Source: Octopus sinensis
Taxonomy: Eukaryota
Direction: 5' to 3'
DNA length: 64,000 bases
Assembly (NCBI RefSeq): GCF_006345805.1
Contig: NC_043006.1
Span: forward strand, 54,622,001-54,686,000
The notes below the pieces were generated by a model that was given only the letters and a program-made list of their open reading frames with translations, had not been told where the DNA came from and made no database searches. Position 1 is the first letter of the stretch. Every line of letters starts with the position of its first letter. The position numbers were made by a program, and so were the translations under genes. Below, one piece after another: positions 30,763 to 41,117 of this stretch.

Positions 30763-33700
30763 TCAATAATTTCTGAAAGAAAAAGAAAAAATATGTATTG
30801 AAATTAAGTTTTGAAAGACATGTAATATAATAGAAAATTAAATTCTATAAAGTTGAAATATTTCTATGTATTTGAATCAAGTTTCCACTGCATTTACCAT
30901 CAATTAATGCAATAGTGTAAGCATGACTGCATGGGTAAGAAATTTGCAAACACATAGTTCCAGCTTTAATCCCACTGATTAAGGTAAAATCTTTTAGCAA
31001 TGCCCTGGGTTGACCAATGCCACTGCACCCTACTGAAATTTAGTAGATAGAAATTGCAGAAGCCTGTTGCAAATAAATTAATATAATATACAAAGGCTAC
31101 TTATTTCCACCACAAAAAGTGCTAATTATTTATCAGTGATTGCCCTGTTGGAAACCAATACAACCAATAATATTATTGTGCATGAAACAATTCTTCTGAT
31201 AATAAATCTTTTTAGAGTTAAGCGTGTTTATATATATATATATATATTTCATATTTTACTTCTTTCAGTCATTGGGCTGCAGCCATACTGGGGCACCATC
31301 TTGAAGGGATTTTAGTTGAATGAATTGACCACAATACTGAATCTTTTTTTCTTACATGCCTGGGATTTATTCCATCACTCTCCTGTTGAACTGCTAAGTT
31401 ACAGGGACATAAAGCAAACGAACACCAGTTGTCAAGTGGAGGTGAGGGGACAAACACATGATAGGCGTCTTTTAGTCTCTGTCTACCAAATCCACTCAGA
31501 AGGATTTGATTTACCTGGGGCTATAGTAGAAGACACCACATGAACCTGGAACCATGTAGAAAGGAAGCAAACTGACCACACAACCACCAAAAATACCAAG
31601 CCCAAACAAACTTTCACAACTTACTTTGCAATAATTCCATCCCTTTTTGCTAAGCGGCAAATACTGTCATCAGATTCACCCTATAAAGAGAGAAGAGAGA
31701 GAGAAAAAAAAAATTTAAAAGGCATCGAAAAGAAATGTTACTGTGAATCTAAGGCTGCATCTCCCTAAATATGAGAAACTTACTGAAGATGAAGTTAATT
31801 CAAAATGTATTAGAACCAAATCTGGCAAACCTTTCATTTTGTAGAATTCTATAATTCAGTACCATCACTTAATAGTGATGCACACCATTATCTATGTAAT
31901 GAAAAGAATGTCAGAGGTGCTTGTCCAGACAATCTTATATGGAAAATTATCTGAAAGTTTTCCTCTTTTTATCTTCCAAAGTTTTGGCCCCAGTCACAAA
32001 AATGAAGCATGAACAGGAATTTGACAACTTTGGCGTTACATGCAAATAAAGATAGAATCACAACAGACTTCCTACATAATCTAGCAATTTTCCAATATTA
32101 ACATTATAATAATGAGCCAAGTTGAAATATATCGAGGGTATTACCATCTGTCGAATCTTCCCACAAATAGCATATGTTTTGTTTGAACCTGTCATTCTGC
32201 CTGTAGTAACATCAACCTGAGAAAGGGAGAAAGATTAGAAATAAAATCATACAAAAACCACATTTCATTCTGATGTGTGTGTGTGCAAGCCATTTTAACT
32301 TGCAACACAAACTGCCAAAAGATAAAAAAACAAAACAAAATGGAAACTAATGTCAGAGGTGCTTGTCCAGATAATTTTATAAGTGAAAAATTAACTGAAA
32401 GTTTTCCTCAATTTATATCCCAAAGACTAGGCTCTGTACACAGGGATACTATGTGAACAGGAATTTGACAACTTTGGTGATACATTTTACATACAAGTTA
32501 CACAACTCTTTTACAAAGGAAACCTAGAGGACCTGTAAACATGGTGAACTGAAGATCACAAGAATGGCAGCAGTGAAGTAGATTGAAAGGTTTAAGTGTG
32601 TATGTATGTTCGAGAGTACGGGCATGTGTACATGTTGGTAAAATTTCTAGCAAGTCTACCATCACTGCCAGGAAGGGCTGTGGCATTGTTCTCCCCTCTT
32701 GAACACACACATTAAAGAAAACCATTGTCCAAATAGTAGTGACGTCTGATCTATTTAAGCCCGACTATGCTAAAACTTTTGAATGCCACCAACTCTTACA
32801 AGTAGTATAGAGAAAGAAAGAAATTTTCTAAATGGATAATGTGAAGAAAGTCAACAAAATAAGCATATGTTACAAAAATACTTGGATCATGGAACAGCAA
32901 CAATTAGATTATACAAGATTTTTCATTTATATAGATCTCACAATCACCATGTATATACAGTCGAACAGAAAGATATCAATGACAAAAGGAAACAGATTTT
33001 GAACTTGTATTACATGGTGACTGATAAGGTCCAGAGGCCCATGATTCAAAAACTTTCAAGCCGTGATTATCCTGTGTTATGCAGTGCATGTAGAACTTAC
33101 GTAACACATGATTTTTTTAAAAGATGGTATGCTGAGATTAGAGATTTGACTGCTATTTCTTATAGCTGTATGTTATACTAAACTTAAGAAATCCTATGTT
33201 CAATTCAATTCCCTCTCACTTTAACACTCATTATAATTATTATCTCTGCCTAAGTGAAGGCAGAGGTATTGTTTTCAGTCATGTTTGTCTGTGGACAAGA
33301 TATCCTAAGAACCGTTGGATGGATTCAGATGAAACTTTCATGAACTGATTAGATTTTGGGATTGATCCAGTACTAGACAAGAGTTCTGGATTATCTACTA
33401 TATTTACTTTACATGCTACCCTCCAACCCATGCTAGCATAGAAAGCGGACGTTAAACGATGATGATGATGATGATGAAATATTATGATCTTATATTCACT
33501 TTCAAGTATTTCTCTGATTATCTCCCTTGAAAGCACATTCATGATTTCCACATAAATTTCAGCAGCGTTGCCGTTTCAAAAGTTTTATATTCGTTTCTCT
33601 ATTATTAATTTCATTCGCATCTCTATCTTAGTAGAAACTGATAGAAATCAAGCTACATAAACAAACGGCAGCAAAGTTGTTCAGAAACTAAATAACACTA

Positions 33701-36700
33701 ACATATTCAGTAACAATAATAAATTTATCCCCGACAATTTTTAGTTTTACCACTTTTGAATATATCGCTCCTCTTTAAAACCTCTCACCTACTTGATAAT
33801 TGCATTTCTCGCTCTGCCCCGAAGGAAGCTTTACTTAATGGACTCACGCTTTTGTGCGCAACAATGTTGTTAAACCCCTGTTAACAGCACAATATGCAGG
33901 TCCTTTCTGTTTTCTTTCATGCGTGGATAAATTTTTTACTCCAGACCTCAAGGGCTGTAAAAACTATATCAGTAGATAGACTAAAAAAGGCCTTCATAGA
34001 GAAAACTGTCCCTGTCCACACTGCCGACAACACACACACACAGCCTGCACACCCATCTTCACATTCCAGGACTTCCACTGGGATCGATCAGGTATCAGAC
34101 AAGGATTCTGCATTATTATTTTTCTATCTTTTTTTTTTTTGATCTTTTGAGAGTGGTTATGTTCACCTTCAGTATTCTCGTTTATTTCAGATATTCTCAT
34201 TTTAAAAATAATCTCTTCCTAATTGTTGGTGTTGCCCTCCCTGGTGGAGGTTTGCATTCACGGAAGTTTTTATCCTCTGACCTCTACTGGATGTCTTTTT
34301 CCTGAACACTTCCTACGACTAACTAACTATATGGAATGCTTACCCCAACCTCTCTTCTCCCTCCATCCCTACCTCCTGTTGAATATAGTGATTTTGTAGC
34401 AAATAAAATGATGGTGTAGTGTATGCAGGTTAAAGGCTATTTGTATGTTTATGAGACCTGCCAAATGCAAGCATTCTTTTCAGATGCATAATGCTGTTGT
34501 CTTCCATCACAGACCTTCCATACCCTCAGAGTTGGCATATTGAAAGGTAGGTCTGGTGAGATTGTTGAGATGCTTGAACAGAGACATGTAGATTTGTGCA
34601 GCACCCAAGAAGGTGAAGAGGAAGTCCTACTAGGTTCCTCACAGGCAAAGAACATAGGTATAAGATCTTTTGGGGTAGGGGGCATGAGTATACTCCTTGT
34701 GGAGAAATGGGTTGATAAGGTAATAGAGGTAGTCAGAGTCTGTGATAGAATACTTAAGCTTAGACTAGTGCTGCAATACAGATTACCAACCATTATCTTG
34801 GCCTATGTACTTCAGCCAGGACTACCCAATGAACAGAAAGACCAATTTTATAAGAAGACCCAGCAAGCCAAGTGAGATCGTAGCTGTGCCCGATGCCAGC
34901 GTCACATAACCAGCCTATTTAAAAGTACCCTTCAATCATCAGGCAATATGCTGTGCTTGAGAAAACCTGTTGAGTCAAGTGAAATTGTCATCATGGCTGG
35001 TGCCAGTGCTGCCTGACTGGTATGTAAAACACATCCAACCCATGCTATGGAAAGCGGATGTTAAACGATGATGATGATATTCTCTAAGAGCTTTCTCAAA
35101 ATGAGCAGTACTTCCTCTTGCAGGGTGTGTGTGTGAAATAATGTTGTTATAAGTACTGGGAACAGTAAAGCATGACAGATGTTTCTAATTGCCTTCACTT
35201 TCAACTTTTATCCTATGAGCAAATCATTTGCAGTTCGTTGTCCATGCTGGCACAGGTTGGATGGTTTGACTAGGGCTGGTAATCCACACCAGCCTCCAAT
35301 CTGATTTGGCATGGCTTTCTACAGCTGGATGCCCTTCCTAATGGCAACAACCCTGAGAATAATGCTTTTAGATGCCGCCAGCATGGGTATCATTTGCATG
35401 ACACCAGTATCTGCACAACTGCCATTTAATATAATTCCAAGGGCCTCAGTCATTGCCTCCATGAGGCCCAACATTCGAAAGGAACATGGTTGTGCTTTTA
35501 ATTTTACTGTATTGTAGCAAGAGTTCAGTGTTAAGAAAAAAGGAATGATAGTTTTAAAAAAAAGAAGTTGAGAAGCATTGGTCTAAAATTCACAGGTGAA
35601 GACAAACATTCTGAAACCAAATTTTAACTAAGAATATTGGTTAAATTTGTAATACTTACTTCAGCAATGTTTATTTGTACAGAAGCATGATCTTTGGCAG
35701 CAATAATGCTATTACTGGCTGAACTAGACACAAAAAGAAAAAAAAAAGAAGAAACCAATGATTATGATCATGAAGAAAATTATTTTAGATTTTAAAGAAA
35801 AATTGGTAGAACTTAAGAGTTGTCTCGGTGCGCGCTAGCTAGTTGTGACTAGTCGACCTTTACTTTGCTTTAAAAAAATATTTATTTTGTTTTATTTACT
35901 TTGCTAGGTAGTCGTTGTAGGATCGACTAGTCATGACTAGCTAGCACGGATGCACGAGTACACGTACCAGACCACTCTTCTTAAGTACTACCAAGTAGTA
36001 CCGAAAAATTACCATCGCAAGTTATTATACTTAAAAAATTACTCGTAGATACTGTTTTATAAACACCATTTGGTGTTTGGGAACAGTTCAGATGTGCAAA
36101 CCAGTTGAATATTCAGATTAGAAATCTGAGATATATTTTCAACAGTTCGACATTTTATATACCAAAGTTTTGACTCCACTCACAGGTTTTTACCATGAGT
36201 CGCAACACCCTTTGGAAAATGATCACCATAACTCCAATATCAAAATATGCTAACATTAAAAGGGGTAGGTAAAAAATATGCACACCACTCGTTTTCGGCA
36301 TAATCCTCACCTTAAACATTGGGTGTGCATATTCTTATTGGTCGTTGCACCAGAAAATAAGGGGCTAATCTTTTGGAATACGTCTCAGACTTATTATCTT
36401 CGTCGTTTTCCGTGAGCACGTGTTGTCTTTTTATCTGTAAACACTCCTGTTTGACGCGTCGAAGAGGACGCTAATGGGTGTGTACCAGTTTTGTTTTTAT
36501 GTAACCATTTCTTTAAGTGTTATTCTTTTACTTGTTTCAGTCATTTAATTGCGGCCATGCTGGAGCACTGCCTTTAGTCGAAAACAATGACCTCAGGATT
36601 TATTCTTTGTAAACCTAGTACTTATTCTATCGTTCAATTTTGTCGAACTGCTAAGTTACGGGGACGTAAGCACACCAACATCGATTGTCAAGCGATGGTG

Positions 36701-39061
36701 AGGGACAAACAGATTTCCCCCAACCAAATCCACACAGAAGGCTTAATTTACATTTCTTCCTTTTCTCCATGCATGTTGCAATATTTCGGCTCTTCGGTCG
36801 TTAAAGATACCCACATGGCTTTTTCGACGTGGATCTCGTTATATTCTTGGAAATTTACGGATTGTACACACAGAAATGAAGCAGGTAAGAACAAATATGG
36901 GCAATCTTTCGGAATACATCTCAGAGCTATCATTAACTTCGTCATTTTCGGTGAGCACGTCGTCTTGTCAATTGTAAACATTCGTGTGCGTGCTCGTTCT
37001 GTTTGACGTGTTGAAGTGGAAGAGGAAGCTAATGGGTAAAAGTACTATTTAAGATGAGCGGTCCCGGTGCGCGCACTCGCGCTAGCTAGTTGATCCCTAC
37101 TTTGTGTTTTATTTACTGACTAGTCACTACTAGCCAGCGCGGATGTGCGCACCGGGACCACTCTTCTTAAATAGTACGTGTATGTGCGAGCGTGTTCTGC
37201 TTTTATGTATTTATGTGTGTGGAGAAAGCTAATGAGCGTACATGTATGTGGAATGTAGATATAATAAAAACAGTTTCGCATTTTAAACTTGAAAAAGTCG
37301 GGGAAATCACATTCCGGTTCATTCCTCAGAATCGAACAATTACGATAATGATACAAGGGACGTAACTCTTAAAACACTAAGGAAGATAATATCGCCAAGA
37401 AAAATGACACATCAAAATGTTAGAATTCAAGAGAATTTGTATTAAAATTTTGAAAACGTGTTTGTAGCATGTCAGGTTTTCTATTTAGATACTTTTTGCG
37501 TCTGTTATTTTATAATTCTACACATGCGTGAAACATTAGTAGAGTAAACACTTTTAATTTCACTTCTTGCCATGTGTGAACCAGTCGAATAATCAGAACG
37601 TTGGAATTCTGAGATTTTTCTTTTCAACAGTTCAGCATTTTCTGTACCAAAGTTTTGACTCCACTCACAGGTTTTTACCATGAGTCGCAACACCCTTTGG
37701 AAAACAATCACGAGGAAACAAAAGCGGCAGTACACCGCTTGTGCTATATATCTAATCAACCTAATTTTTTATTTTAACGTCCACTTTTCATGCCATATTG
37801 TTTTACGGCTAGATGCCCTCGCCAATCCTCACCCGTTCCCAATTTAGGTATTTTCGGTCTACCATATTTTCTCATTCAAGTTTGGAAACAGAGGGTACCA
37901 CTCCCATGACGTTGACTCCCACCCCAACATTTTAAGGTCGACCTGAAACTACAGTGAAAGACACTCGCAGCAGGTGTCACGCAGTAGGACTGAAACAAAA
38001 ACTACACAGCCATAGTTAAAACTAATTTTCTATCTTCTCATAGCAGTGAATGTTTTGCTTTGAAGAATAACGATACTTCATGACACAAAACTCATCTAAA
38101 AATATGCAAACTTGTCTCCCGCGTGTTTTGAATTCAGGCCTGTCCCATTCGTATGTGATCGAAGACCTTATTTTCCAACATAAAAGATATCTAGTACTAC
38201 TTTATACAAGTTTTATTTGTATTTAAAACGGTAGTGTGATTTGGATACTATTTTTAGTAGATCTAGAAATCACACTTACAGGTCTCGGGGTGTAACATCA
38301 TATTTTGATATCTATTCAGTCGCCTTACACATGAAATAAACGTTTCGACTGTAGGCACAAGACCTGAAATTTGGGGGGGGGGGGCATTCGATTACATCGA
38401 CTCCAGTGCGAAACTGGTACTTGATTTATCAACTCCAGTGGCATTTGAACTCAGAACGTAAAGACAGACGAAATACCTATTTCTTTACTACCCACAAGGG
38501 ACAAACAAACGGATTAAGTCCGATTATATCGACCCCGAAAGGATGAAAGGCAAAATCGATCTCGGCGGAATTTGAACTGAGAACGTAGCGGCAGGCGAAA
38601 TACCGCTAAGCATTTCGCCCGGCGTGCTAACGTTTCTGCGAGCTCGCCGAAGAATGAAATAAGTGTAACATAAAAACATAAACACGAATAAAAAATGCAA
38701 ATCTTCGTTTCTACATGAATGACAAAATTTCCAGCGGAAAATAAATAGGATGTGGTAACTTTTATGCTAGTTACAAATAGGAAGTTAACGAGCTTATGAA
38801 AAGCCTTAGCGATTTCGTTTAGGGGACCTTAAATTTAGCATTGTAAATGAAAGGAAACTAAGCCGAAAACGTAGTACAAATTTCTCCCGTGTATAATAGA
38901 GGACTATTACAAGATAAACACCACAGAGGTACGTAATAAAGTAGACAAAAATAATTTCAAAATACAATTTAGAAAAAGAAAACGTGTAAACCACGTGTGT
39001 AAGTAACATACCATTTCCTTGGGATATACATATCCACGAATTCACCTGCTTCGTTCTGCAT
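30763..39061 (-). CDS. RPS21: 40S ribosomal protein S21 (eS21), complete, 83 aa. Coding exons 39012-39061, 35660-35723, 32145-32216, 31625-31680, 30763-30772
   Basis: Exons of 50+64+72+56+10 = 252 nt, all GT-AG, give [83 protein letters not shown]. Confidence 0.99.
31906..32035 (-). ncRNA. Box H/ACA snoRNA, family A copy 1 (RPS21 intron 4); predicted guide for 18S Psi1238 and Psi36 (human numbering)
   Basis: Hairpin 1 (CCAAAGTT/AACTTTGG), H box AGATAA (31969-31974), hairpin 2 (AGAGG/CCTCT), ACA 3 nt from the end. Both pockets are complementary to conserved 18S sequence, with 14-nt spacing to the boxes. Confidence 0.9.
32348..32479 (-). ncRNA. Box H/ACA snoRNA, family A copy 2 (RPS21 intron 3)
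   Basis: Paralog of 31906-32035. Guide elements GTCAAATT/GCC and CTTT/GACAAGCA are identical, the H box is ATATAA (32413-32418), the ACA box is present and the upper stems diverge but still pair. Confidence 0.9.
33940..34010 (+). mobile_element. Possible Gypsy integrase C-terminal relic
   Basis: VKTISVDRLKKAFIE resembles the (D)TVSIDRLKPA motif; only one short motif. Confidence 0.35.
34490..34860 (+). mobile_element. RTE LINE endonuclease fragment in RPS21 intron 3 (antisense to the gene)
   Basis: LRVG.LKGRSGEIVEMLEQRHVDLCSTQE...GGMSILLVEKWVDKVIEVVRVCDRILKLRL...AYVLQPGL. Confidence 0.85.
35803..35994. repeat. Foldback hairpin P1 (long imperfect inverted repeat) in RPS21 intron 2
   Basis: ttggtagaacttaagagttgtct..gctagctagttgtgactagtcga pairs with tcgactagtcatgactagctagc..agaccactcttcttaagtactaccaa around an AT-rich loop. 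Confidence 0.85.
36090..36217 (-). ncRNA. SNORA13: Box H/ACA snoRNA, SNORA13/snR35-like, copy 1 (RPS21 intron 2); guide for 18S Psi1248
   Basis: Stem CCAAAG/CTTTGG; pocket GTGTT and GTCAAA complementary to 18S UUUGAC-U-C-AACAC; 14 nt to H box ATATAA (36155-36160); second hairpin then ACA+3. Confidence 0.88.
36520..36740 (-). mobile_element. 3' half of the OR-type SINE in RPS21 intron 2
   Basis: cttttacttgtttcagtcattt..cggccatgctggagcac..ctttagtcga. Confidence 0.75.
37042..37177. repeat. Foldback hairpin P2, paralogous to P1
   Basis: gtactatttaagatgagcggtcccggtgcgcgcactcgcgctagctagt pairs with actagccagcgcggatgtgcgcaccgggaccactcttcttaaatagtac (~48-bp arms). Confidence 0.85.
37570..37702 (-). 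ncRNA. SNORA13: Box H/ACA snoRNA, SNORA13-like, copy 2 (RPS21 intron 2)
   Basis: Hairpin 1 is identical to copy 1. H box ACAGAA (37640-37645). Hairpin 2 shows compensatory changes (CGAAC/GTTTG vs TGAAC/GTTCA). ACA+3 present. Confidence 0.88.
38350..38648 (-). mobile_element. Two nested or tandem OK-type SINE copies
   Basis: Two SINE cores joined at gaaatacc|tatttctttactacccacaag; head cggcgagctcgcagaaacg at about 38648. Confidence 0.75.
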
Positions 39062-39190
39062 AATCCTTTCTTTGTTCTAAGAAAATCTTCTGCAACAGTA
39101 AAGAAACAAAATGCGAGACTTAGCAAATCATTGTACATTTAAAACCTCAGAAATTCCATTTTTAATTTTAAGAAGAATCACACAACTTAC

Positions 39191-39222
39191 AGTTAAAATG
39201 GACGACCGTGAAAAGGAAGAGG
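39191..39222 (-). promoter_or_regulatory. RPS21: RPS21 non-coding exon 1 with TCT initiator / 5'TOP tract
   Basis: The minus strand reads ttcCTCTTCCTTTTCACGGTCGTCCATTTTAACT|gtaagt. A ~100-nt intron leads to an acceptor (gttgcag) at 39090. A pyrimidine-tract start is typical of ribosomal protein mRNAs. Confidence 0.85.
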
Positions 39223-39622
39223 AACACGAGATTTCGGGTAAATTATAACGAGAATCACGTTGATCTCTCGTTCAGTATTTTTTTTACGGAGGGAAATAAA
39301 AATAATTTTAAAAGGCTTTCTTTCATAAATGTAATTTTAATTGTTAAAATAACTATTATTTCTAAATATGAATTAACTTAACAATTAAATACATATATTT
39401 ATTTTATGAAATTGAAAAAAATTCACACATCTGTAAGAGTGCAGACGCACACCTCTTCCTGTAATACCGCAGAAGACGGAGATCCTATCATCTCGTTCCT
39501 TTCTAATCCTTCTAAATCTAAATCTGTTCAATACCATGTTTTCGCACTAATTATCAACCACTATTCTCGGTTGAGGATTTGTAATACAAACGAATAATCT
39601 CAGTCGTTAGTCACAGAACAAG

Positions 39623-40227
39623 ATGATTGCTTTTGGAAAAAGAATTTTAGCTGTTAAAAATGACGATGTTGATGCTATGGTTAAACATATTAATATGCGA
39701 TTGCTTAACAAAATAGAACATAGATTAAGAACATACAATTCTATAGATCAAATAGTTGATACAAACGAAGCAGCAGATTTTCCGGTTGAGTTCTTAAATT
39801 CATTAGAAATATTGGAATTTCCACCACATGAATTGTATTTGAAGAAAGGCGCTCCAATTATTCTTTTGAGAAATTTACAAACCCCAAAGTTATGCAGTGG
39901 AATAAGATTAATAGTGGAATCCCGTACAAATAATGTACCTGAAGCAAAAATACTAAATGAAAAGTACAAAAATGAATTAGCATTATTACCAAGGGTTAAA
40001 TTAATTGCAGAGGATCCAGTGATTACAATTTTCTGTTAAATTATCCTTTGCTATGACAATAAATAAATCACAATGCCAAACATTAAAAAAAAGTTGGTAT
40101 CAATCTTAAAAATGAAGTATTTTTCATGGAAAACTATATGTATCACTTTCGAGCTTAGGAGATCCCAATGATCTGTTATTACACAAAAGACGAAAAAGTT
40201 GAAAATGTTTATAATACAGTTCTTTAG
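39623..40227 (+). mobile_element. Helitron PIF1-helicase C-terminal fragment, frameshifted, ~400 bp upstream of the RPS21 TSS
   Basis: FPVEFLNSLEILEFPPHELYLKKGAPIILLRNLQTPKLCSGIRLIV, then after a frameshift KLSFAMTINKSQCQTLKKVGI...GKLYVSLS. Confidence 0.9.
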
Positions 40228-41117
40228 ATTATAAAAATAAATCAATAAAACCAAAAATGAAAAAAAATTAAATAGCTGGACAACAAGGCGCAGTTCGATT
40301 TTTAAATAAGAAAAATTATATTAATGATGACATTTTATAAATATTATGAGTTGTATGAGAGGTTATTATTGTTAAATTAATTTATTATATTTTTTTCATT
40401 TAAATTGTTATTTATATTATGTACTTCTGTTAATAAAATATAATTTAGATCAATAAATGATAGGTCATTCTAGTTTTTAATAAAATGAAATGTTTCAGCT
40501 GCTAATTTTTGTTTCCACAAATTATGCTGGTATCTCTGGAAAATTTCATTTTATTAAAAAGATATTCATTTGACAAGTTCCAGGTGGAATACTCCTCAAA
40601 AGTATGTATTATTTAACACTACATTGCAAAAATGCATGAGGAAACAAAGTCGAGATGCATGAAATTATCTGCCCTTCTCCATTTTTTTCACCTTAAATTT
40701 CAGTGTAACCTTATTGTACACCATCTGAAAGGTGTTTGTAGAAAATGAAAAACCAATTTTTCTGAAAGTTATGAGGTGCAGTCAAGGCTGTGGTAAGTTT
40801 GCTTCCCAACTACATGCTTCCAGGTTTAGTTCCTCTGTGTGATATGTTGGACATGTTTTCTATAGCCTCCAACCAACCAAATTTGTGTCAGTGGATTTGG
40901 TTGATGGAAACTGAAAGGAGGCTGTCGTGTTTGTGCCCCACCACTGCTTGACAACTGTTGGTGTGTTTATACCCTTGTAACAATGGTTTGGCAAAAGAGA
41001 CCGGCAGAATAAGTAAAAAGATAAGTACTGGAACCAATTTGTTCAACTAATTCTTCAATGTGGTGCCCCAGCATGGCTTTAGCCTTTTGACTGAAGCAAG
41101 TACAAAGATAAAGAAAA

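What the first reader, a model, noticed from the sequence alone, without database searches (positions are those of the whole stretch)
36090..37702. Two SNORA13-like guides for hypermodified 18S Psi1248 inside one intron
Seen: two copies 1.35 kb apart, both in RPS21 intron 2. About 59 bp covering hairpin 1 are identical (36161-36219 vs 37646-37704), while hairpin 2 has diverged with compensatory pairs. The pocket GUGUU + GUCAAA fits 18S UUUGAC-U1248-C-AACAC with 14-nt spacing. Known: this is the m1acp3Psi site guided by human SNORA13 and yeast snR35, and vertebrates usually carry one snoRNA per intron because release is by exonucleolytic trimming of the lariat. Inference: two snoRNAs in one intron need an endonucleolytic cut or a hidden splice between them. 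The identical hairpin 1 suggests gene conversion or strong selection.
Basis: partly seen in the sequence, partly recalled or inferred. Interest (0 to 1): 0.7.

Follow-up and report, generated by a model that had tools for sequence, protein, structure and literature searches.

The report
Twin H/ACA snoRNAs in octopus RPS21 intron
Intron 2 of the Octopus sinensis ribosomal protein S21 gene carries two conserved copies of a small guide RNA that should direct pseudouridine formation at a universally modified 18S rRNA site; the RNAs look real but the arrangement is a known kind.

Summary
The window is Octopus sinensis, and RPS21 lies on the minus strand. Its 3.3-kb intron 2 (39011..35724) contains two sense-oriented box H/ACA snoRNA genes: A at 36226..36090 and B at 37711..37570, separated by 1343 nt.

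Each copy has the full architecture: hairpin, H box, hairpin, then ACA 3 nt from the end. The hairpin-1 pocket (GUGUU / GUCAAA, 14 nt to the H box) fits the 18S loop-35 sequence UUUGAC-U-C-AACAC. That is the site guided by yeast snR35 and human SNORA13.

Both copies are kept in O. vulgaris and O. bimaculoides. The 54-nt hairpin 1 is invariant in all six sequences, while the surrounding intron varies at 13% of columns. Hairpin 2 differs between the copies but stays paired. Purifying selection explains the identity, so gene conversion is not needed.

The "one snoRNA per intron" rule applies to vertebrates, not to a cephalopod. Intronic snoRNA clusters are known in rice and Drosophila.

The Rfam SNORA13 and snR35 models do not match, so these are functional analogues, not shown family members. 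The same gene also hosts a second H/ACA pair in introns 3 and 4.

The parts
36090..36226 (-). H/ACA snoRNA copy A, the 3'-proximal copy in the intron. Hairpin 1 is 36215..36162. The pocket strands are GUGUU at 36208..36204 and GUCAAA at 36174..36169. The H box AUAUAA is at 36160..36155. Hairpin 2 is about 36149..36097. ACA is at 36095..36093 and the 3' end is near 36090.
   Evidence: (R1, 165.7 bits). Orthologues are present in O. vulgaris and O. bimaculoides.
37570..37711 (-). H/ACA snoRNA copy B, the 5'-proximal copy in the intron. Hairpin 1 is 37700..37647. The pocket strands are GUGUU at 37693..37689 and GUCAAA at 37659..37654. The H box ACAGAA is at 37645..37640. Hairpin 2 is about 37634..37577. 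ACA is at 37575..37573 and the 3' end is near 37570.
   Evidence: (R1, 161 bits). Orthologues are present in both other Octopus genomes.
36227..37569 (-). Spacer of 1343 nt between the two snoRNAs. It evolves at or above the intron background rate. It contains a MITE-like long hairpin (37037-37182) that is not aligned in O. bimaculoides, and a local two-copy repeat (36362-36480 and 36899-37037). No GTRAGW donor or pyrimidine-rich acceptor motif is present on the sense strand.
   Evidence: (162 of 1025 columns variable, against 13% background).
35724..39011 (-). RPS21 intron 2, the host intron (3288 nt). It has a GTATGT donor and a pyrimidine tract followed by TAG as acceptor.
39012..39090 (-). 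RPS21 exon 2, with the ATG at 39061. It encodes MQNEAGEFVDMYIPRK plus the first two bases of a Cys codon.
   Evidence: The protein is 100% identical to Octopus eS21.
35660..35723 (-). RPS21 exon 3. It encodes (C)SASNSIIAAKDHASVQINIAE and continues directly from exon 2.

Best explanation
The two elements are functional, duplicated box H/ACA snoRNA genes in intron 2 of Octopus sinensis RPS21. They are transcribed as part of the RPS21 pre-mRNA.

Each would assemble co-transcriptionally into an H/ACA snoRNP (dyskerin, Nop10, Nhp2, Gar1). Each would use the pocket of its 5' hairpin (5' strand GUGUU, 3' strand GUCAAA, 14 nt from the H box) to pair with 18S rRNA UUUGAC-U-C-AACAC. This converts the loop-35 uridine to pseudouridine. 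That is the first step toward m1acp3-pseudouridine, the job done by snR35 in yeast and SNORA13/ACA13 in human.

Hairpin 2 is mainly a structural second hairpin carrying the ACA box.

The pair is an intronic snoRNA cluster of the kind known in Drosophila and rice. After splicing and debranching, exonucleases trim inward to the two snoRNPs. Release of two separate snoRNAs then needs a cut somewhere in the unconstrained 1.3-kb spacer.

Shown here: anatomy, pocket complementarity, spacing, host intron, and conservation of both copies under selection.

Inferred: expression, snoRNP assembly, the actual modification, and the processing route.
For: - Architecture and boxes are canonical in both copies. 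Fold z-scores are -3.9 and -2.2.
- The pocket motif GUGUUGC...GGAGUCAAA is the part that aligns to the Rfam H/ACA families TtnuHACA21 and snoR03.
- The pocket is complementary to GACUCAACACG, the loop-35 sequence printed in PMC3045603. That paper states that snR35 in yeast and ACA13 in human pseudouridylate this U.
- Both copies lie on the RPS21 sense strand inside intron 2.
- Both are retained in O. vulgaris and O. bimaculoides. The 54-nt hairpin-1 core is identical in 6 of 6 sequences, while 13% of intron columns vary. The chance of 0 variable columns in 120 nt is about 5e-8.
- The H and ACA boxes are intact in all six sequences. Hairpin 2 keeps its pairing through double changes.
- Intronic clusters are a known organisation (PMC2780460, PMC11028025).
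Against: - There are no expression data. Small-RNA reads were not available.
- The octopus 18S sequence was not in hand, so target complementarity rests on the known conservation of loop 35.
- The Rfam SNORA13 and snR35 models do not hit. The best Rfam scores are far below gathering thresholds: 26 bits against 100 and 80.
- Three guide nucleotides on each side lie between the guide duplexes and the upper stem. Only a C-G pair could bridge them, which is slightly unusual geometry.
- No conserved processing signal was found in the spacer.
- No orthologue was found in the RPS21 loci of an abalone, a scallop and a chiton. The host relationship is therefore not ancient.
Confidence: 0.8

Rival explanations
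1. The intron yields mainly a snoRNA-ended long non-coding RNA (sno-lncRNA) of about 1.6 kb. Copy B would cap the 5' end and copy A the 3' end, because exonucleases stop at the two snoRNPs and nothing cuts the spacer. Human SLERT is the H/ACA-ended precedent. Individual snoRNAs might then be a minor product or a by-product.
For: - The geometry is exactly what is required: two intact same-sense snoRNAs in one intron with no exon between them.
- The arrangement has been kept in three species.
- Reviews state that two snoRNAs in one intron give sno-lncRNAs after ordinary trimming (PMC4233238; PMC11028025, which describes SLERT with SNORA5C and SNORA5A ends).
Against: - The spacer is not conserved above background. 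It is 15.8% variable, its length varies from about 1.16 to 1.44 kb, and it has a lineage-specific MITE-like insertion. However, known sno-lncRNAs are also poorly conserved.
- In Drosophila and rice clusters, individual snoRNAs are described as the products.
- No RNA data are available.
Confidence: 0.25
2. An unannotated alternative (cassette or recursive) exon lies between the copies. In some transcripts each snoRNA would then sit in its own intron and be released by the ordinary one-per-intron route.
For: Alternative splicing of snoRNA host genes is common in human (PMC4233238). Nothing here rules out weak splice sites.
Against: - The RPS21 coding sequence continues without a gap from exon 2 to exon 3.
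- There is no GTRAGW donor-like or pyrimidine-rich acceptor-like motif on the sense strand in the 1343-nt spacer.
- The spacer has no conserved block beyond the background level apart from a local repeat.
- A cassette exon would probably disrupt a very short, highly expressed ORF.
Confidence: 0.07
3. Only one copy is functional and the other is a decaying duplicate, that is, a snoRNA pseudogene.
For: Duplicated snoRNAs often include non-expressed copies (PMC11028025). Hairpin 2 evolves only slightly slower than background (11 of 135 columns variable).
Against: Both copies keep an invariant hairpin 1, an ANANNA H box, an ACA box at -3 and a paired hairpin 2 in three species. Neutral sequence over the same period has accumulated about 13% variable columns plus many indels.
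Confidence: 0.08

Closest known systems
Yeast snR35 / human SNORA13 (ACA13): H/ACA guides for the 18S loop-35 uridine (yeast U1191, human U1248), the first step of m1acp3-pseudouridine
   Same: It is a two-hairpin H/ACA RNA. The guide pocket is in the 5' hairpin and is complementary to UUUGAC-U-C-AACAC, with canonical 14-nt spacing to the H box (PMC3045603). It is intron-encoded, like SNORA13.
   Different: There is no detectable sequence or structure match to the Rfam SNORA13 or snR35 models at E<=10. The host gene differs: RPS21 here, the lncRNA EPB41L4A-AS1 in human (PMC12975130). There are two tandem paralogues in one intron rather than one gene.
Rfam TtnuHACA21 (Tetrahymena) and snoR03 H/ACA families
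   Same: These are the best Rfam alignments. The shared pocket strings are GUGUUGC and GGAGUCAAA, with the same hairpin-1 layout.
   Different: Scores are 24-26 bits against gathering thresholds of 100 and 80 (E 0.5-7). Hairpin 2 does not align. The resemblance is confined to the target-constrained pocket.
Intronic snoRNA gene clusters of rice and Drosophila melanogaster (Liang et al. 2002; Huang et al. 2004, 2005, as cited in PMC2780460 and PMC2246290)
   Same: Several snoRNA genes, often paralogous H/ACA isoforms, lie in one intron of a host gene. Ribosomal protein genes are frequent hosts.
   Different: This one is in a cephalopod mollusc, for which I found no snoRNA study. It has only two members, with a long spacer of 1.3 kb.
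sno-lncRNAs, especially SLERT (H/ACA-ended, SNORA5C/SNORA5A, human TBRG4)
   Same: Two H/ACA snoRNAs bound one intronic segment. Exonuclease trimming alone would give a snoRNA-capped lncRNA (PMC11028025, PMC4233238).
   Different: In SLERT the two snoRNAs come to share an intron only through exon skipping. Here they share an intron constitutively. No evidence exists that such an RNA accumulates in octopus.

Membership tests
Box H/ACA snoRNA (class) | Hairpin-hinge-hairpin-tail secondary structure | tested here: met
   Single-sequence folds and the RNAalifold consensus of six sequences both give this structure. 98.9% of cells are paired, against 22-45% for slid controls.
Box H/ACA snoRNA (class) | H box ANANNA in the hinge, and an ACA box 3 nt from the 3' end | tested here: met
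   AUAUAA and ACAGAA follow hairpin 1. ACA is followed by 3 nt, at which point paralogue homology ends. The true 3' end was not mapped.
Box H/ACA snoRNA (class) | Bipartite pocket complementary to a target, with the target U 14-16 nt from the H or ACA box | tested here: met
   GUCAAA and GUGUU flank U-C of UUUGAC-U-C-AACAC, with 14 nt to the H box. The target sequence is taken from PMC3045603 and general knowledge, not from octopus 18S.
Box H/ACA snoRNA (class) | Accumulates as a stable ~130-140-nt RNA bound by dyskerin and the other core proteins | not testable with these tools
   No expression or RNP data were available.
SNORA13 (Rfam RF00396) / snR35 family | Match to the family covariance model at or above the gathering score | tested here: not met
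   There was no Rfam hit at gathering thresholds in the whole window. Neither SNORA13 nor snR35 is listed even at E<=10 over 33000-41000.
SNORA13 (Rfam RF00396) / snR35 family | Guides pseudouridylation of the 18S loop-35 U (human 1248, yeast 1191) | tested here: inconclusive
   Pocket complementarity and spacing fit. The modification itself and the octopus 18S sequence were not examined.
Intronic snoRNA gene cluster | Two or more snoRNA genes in the sense orientation within a single intron, with no exon between them | tested here: met
   Both copies lie between exon 2 (39090..39012) and exon 3 (35723..35660), and the coding sequence is contiguous. No splice-like motifs occur in the spacer. 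A non-coding cassette exon cannot be formally excluded without RNA data.
sno-lncRNA | A stable non-polyadenylated RNA whose 5' and 3' ends are the two snoRNAs | not testable with these tools
   Only the genomic precondition is met.

The most novel reading that the evidence does not exclude
Octopus RPS21 intron 2 constitutively produces an H/ACA-capped sno-lncRNA of about 1.6 kb (ends near 37711 and 36090) in addition to, or instead of, two free snoRNAs. Its architecture has been kept since the O. bimaculoides and O. sinensis lineages split. That would be the first sno-lncRNA outside mammals, and the first made without exon skipping from a ribosomal protein gene. The neighbouring snR85-like pair flanking exon 4 would offer a second, SLERT-style opportunity if exon 4 were skipped.
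Probability: 0.2. Interest if true: 0.6.

Novelty: new member of a known kind. Interest (0 to 1): 0.3.

Why it matters
It adds unannotated but well-supported snoRNA genes to a cephalopod genome. Rfam finds nothing here at its curated thresholds.

It identifies the likely octopus guide for one of the most conserved rRNA modifications, the base of m1acp3-pseudouridine next to the P site.

It shows that Octopus RPS21 is a compound host for at least four H/ACA genes. By my inference these are aimed at two uridines 10 nt apart in 18S.

It also extends the intronic-cluster organisation, so far described mainly in plants and flies, to molluscs. The locus offers a clean natural test of how two snoRNPs in one intron are resolved: by an endonucleolytic cut or as a sno-lncRNA.

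None of this overturns current understanding.

Tried and rejected
- Rfam at gathering thresholds over the whole window gave no hit. At E<=10 only weak pocket-driven hits appeared.
- I looked for the same snoRNA in the RPS21 loci of Haliotis asinina, Pecten maximus and Liolophura sinensis. I used my covariance model R1 with default filters and with filters off, plus a pocket pattern. Nothing scored better than E=0.64 and no hit had the pocket. RPS21 hosting is therefore not shared with these molluscs. No other cephalopod genome was reachable with the tools.
- Gene conversion as the cause of hairpin-1 identity is not needed. The identity extends across orthologues, and paralogue-specific differences elsewhere in the RNA are stably inherited.
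- The local repeat 36362-36480 / 36899-37037 was tested as a possible further snoRNA. It has no fold signal on either strand (z -1.05 to +0.72). Its C/D-like motifs are not conserved, and the CUGA is deleted in O. bimaculoides. Rejected; what it is remains unexplained.
- The MITE-like 54-bp-arm hairpin at 37037-37182 was considered as a conserved RNase III entry site. It is not aligned in O. bimaculoides, so it cannot be the ancestral processing signal.
- The 139-aa ORF at 36587-37006 (+) has no Pfam match.
- The C/D-like snoR60 hit at 34571-34648 has poor boxes and is not convincing.
- A retroposed origin of one copy was considered. There is no poly(A) tail and no target-site duplication at either copy, so it is not supported.

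Full report
**What and where.** A tblastn search with human and fly eS21 places RPS21 on the minus strand of the window. Translating the hits gives exon 2 (39090..39012, ATG at 39061), exon 3 (35723..35660), exon 4 (32216..32145) and exon 5 (31680..about 31625). Upstream of exon 2 there is a pyrimidine-rich TOP-like tract followed by a GTAAGT donor at about 39225..39190, and exon 2 starts after a ttgcag acceptor.

The spliced protein is 100% identical to the eS21 of Octopus. The window is 100% identical to Octopus sinensis GCA_006345805.1 chromosome CM016868.1. This is a cephalopod, not a vertebrate.

**Checking the observation.** The two copies share an exact 60-nt run, 36160-36219 = 37645-37704. 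Detectable similarity covers only 36092-36226 versus 37572-37711 (86%), and the flanks do not align. The RNAs read on the minus strand, which is the RPS21 sense strand.

Copy A is 36226..36090 and copy B is 37711..37570. The spacer between them is 1343 nt. Each copy has these features:
- a 54-nt hairpin 1 (CCAAAG...CUUUGG);
- an H box (AUAUAA in A, ACAGAA in B);
- a second hairpin;
- an ACA box followed by exactly 3 nt, after which the paralogues cease to align.

Single-sequence folds (z -3.9 and -2.2) and an independent RNAalifold consensus both give the hairpin-hinge-hairpin-tail shape. In my hand-drawn structure 98.9% of cells pair, against 22-45% when the 3' partners are slid. Two pairs carry double changes, and RNAalifold finds a third.

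**The guide.** In hairpin 1 the 3' pocket strand contains GUCAAA and the 5' strand contains GUGUU. There are 14 nt from the G of GUCAAA to the H box. These pair with UUUGAC and AACAC on either side of U-C in the 18S loop-35 sequence.

PMC3045603 prints GACUCAACACG for this loop. It states that the loop is strongly conserved between yeast and human. It also states that the first step of the U1191/U1248 hypermodification is pseudouridylation by snR35 in yeast or ACA13 in human.

The only Rfam alignments to the two copies are to H/ACA families from Tetrahymena (TtnuHACA21) and to snoR03. What aligns is precisely GUGUUGC...GGAGUCAAA. These scores (24-26 bits) are far below the gathering thresholds. 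SNORA13 and snR35 themselves do not appear even at E<=10, and nothing in the window reaches any gathering score. I therefore call the RNAs functional analogues of snR35/SNORA13 by pocket, not demonstrated family members.

One mild oddity is that three nucleotides on each side separate the guide strings from the continuous upper stem. A C-G pair can bridge them.

**Selection or conversion.** Both copies exist at orthologous positions in O. vulgaris (98%) and O. bimaculoides (about 94.5%). The 54-nt hairpin-1 core is letter-for-letter identical in all six sequences. In the aligned remainder of intron 2, 13% of columns vary among the three species. The chance of no variable column in 2 x 60 nt at that rate is about 5e-8.

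The differences between A and B in the H box, in the hairpin-2 loop and in several stem pairs are shared by the orthologues. The duplication therefore predates the split of these species, and the rest of the RNA has not been homogenised since. Purifying selection on the guide hairpin is a sufficient explanation.

Hairpin 2 evolves only somewhat slower than background (11 of 135 columns variable) but keeps its pairing. Its internal loop is small and differs between the copies. It probably serves as the structural ACA hairpin rather than as a second guide.

**How two in one intron are handled.** [quoted passage not shown] PMC2246290 cites the Drosophila work on multiple intronic clusters of H/ACA snoRNAs. 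PMC11028025 treats intronic clusters as a standard category across model organisms. The arrangement is thus a known kind.

The logic that exonucleases alone cannot separate two snoRNPs is sound. When two snoRNAs lie in one intron, trimming yields a snoRNA-ended lncRNA (PMC4233238, PMC11028025). SLERT is the H/ACA-ended example.

From sequence I can add three points:
- The coding sequence is contiguous across the intron.
- The sense strand of the spacer has no GTRAGW donor or pyrimidine-rich acceptor motif.
- The spacer evolves at or above background (15.8% variable columns). Its length ranges from about 1.16 to 1.44 kb among species.

A long MITE-like hairpin at 37037-37182 would make double-stranded RNA in the spacer, but it is not aligned in O. 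bimaculoides. It cannot be a conserved processing signal.

I therefore favour separate snoRNAs released after a non-specific or unrecognised endonucleolytic cut. A sno-lncRNA remains a live alternative and a hidden exon is unlikely.

**Wider context found on the way.** My covariance model R1, built from the six sequences, found only these two copies in the 64-kb window. It also gave a weak hit in intron 4. That hit, and a paralogue in intron 3, are a second H/ACA family:
- The copies lie at about 32480..32348 (intron 3) and about 32036..31906 (intron 4).
- They flank exon 4, one per intron.
- Both are conserved in all three species.
- They give a weak Rfam snR85 hit (20.9 bits, gathering score 37).
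- Their 5' pocket strand, UUGUCAAAUUCC, is complementary to AAUUUGAC. By my inference this places their target U ten nucleotides upstream of the loop-35 site.
- In this pair hairpin 2 is nearly identical and the hairpin-1 upper stem has diverged, the reverse of the intron-2 pair.
- The 3' half of hairpin 1 plus the hinge resembles the intron-2 family, which hints at a common origin.

Octopus RPS21 is thus a host for at least four H/ACA genes.

The RPS21 loci of an abalone, a scallop and a chiton contain no recognisable copy of the intron-2 snoRNA. I found no paper on cephalopod snoRNAs.

**Verdict.** The feature is real and the description accurate. The functional assignment is well supported by anatomy and conservation. 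The 'puzzle' is largely dissolved by taxonomy and by known precedents. What remains open, and easily testable with existing octopus RNA-seq, is whether both copies are expressed and whether a snoRNA-ended lncRNA accumulates.

Noticed in passing
window 32348-32480 (-) and 31906-32036 (-): A second pair of paralogous H/ACA snoRNA genes lies in RPS21 introns 3 and 4, flanking exon 4, and is conserved in three Octopus species. It gives a weak Rfam snR85 hit (20.9 bits, GA 37). The 5' pocket strand UUGUCAAAUUCC is complementary to 18S AAUUUGAC, which would target the U ten nt upstream of the loop-35 site (my inference). Hairpin 2 is nearly identical between the copies while the hairpin-1 upper stem diverged. 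In O. bimaculoides the intron-4 copy has two pocket changes.
   Followed up: partly
window 36155-36180 and 37640-37665 vs 31975-32000 (-): The 3' half of hairpin 1 plus the hinge is similar between the intron-2 family and the intron-3/4 family (CUGUGA.UGG.G.CAAAACUUUGG.A.AUAAAA). This suggests that all four H/ACA genes may descend from one ancestor whose pocket was retargeted to a neighbouring site.
   Followed up: no
window 36362-36480 and 36899-37037: A local two-copy repeat (78% identity) lies within the spacer and is found nowhere else in the window. The second copy and the roughly 30 nt adjoining it at lower coordinates (36870-36923) are more conserved among the three species than the surrounding intron. 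It has no fold signal and no conserved snoRNA boxes. Its nature is unexplained.
   Followed up: partly
window 37037-37182, and a related element at 35815-35991: MITE-like long inverted repeats are present (54-nt arms, 85% complementary; spurious Rfam MIR810 and mir-726 hits). The one in the spacer is present in O. sinensis and O. vulgaris but is not aligned in O. bimaculoides.
   Followed up: partly
window 33436-33469, 35047-35078 (+) and 37773-37793 (-): A short repeated motif (GCATAGAAAGCGGACGTTAAA, followed on the plus strand by ATGATGATGAT) occurs three times in RPS21 introns 2 and 3. It is probably the end of a dispersed repeat.
   Followed up: no
window 36860-36890 (+): The plus strand (antisense to RPS21) has an ATG-initiated short ORF that runs into a consensus CAG|GTAAGA donor. 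The longer 139-aa ORF over this stretch (36587-37006) has no Pfam match. It is probably chance.
   Followed up: partly
L002 24767-28299 and L003 21061-28286 (downstream of RPS21; in window coordinates below about 24300): The neighbouring called gene encodes a nucleoside diphosphate kinase (NDK) domain protein. In O. vulgaris a Pif1-like helicase fragment is called just upstream of RPS21.
   Followed up: no
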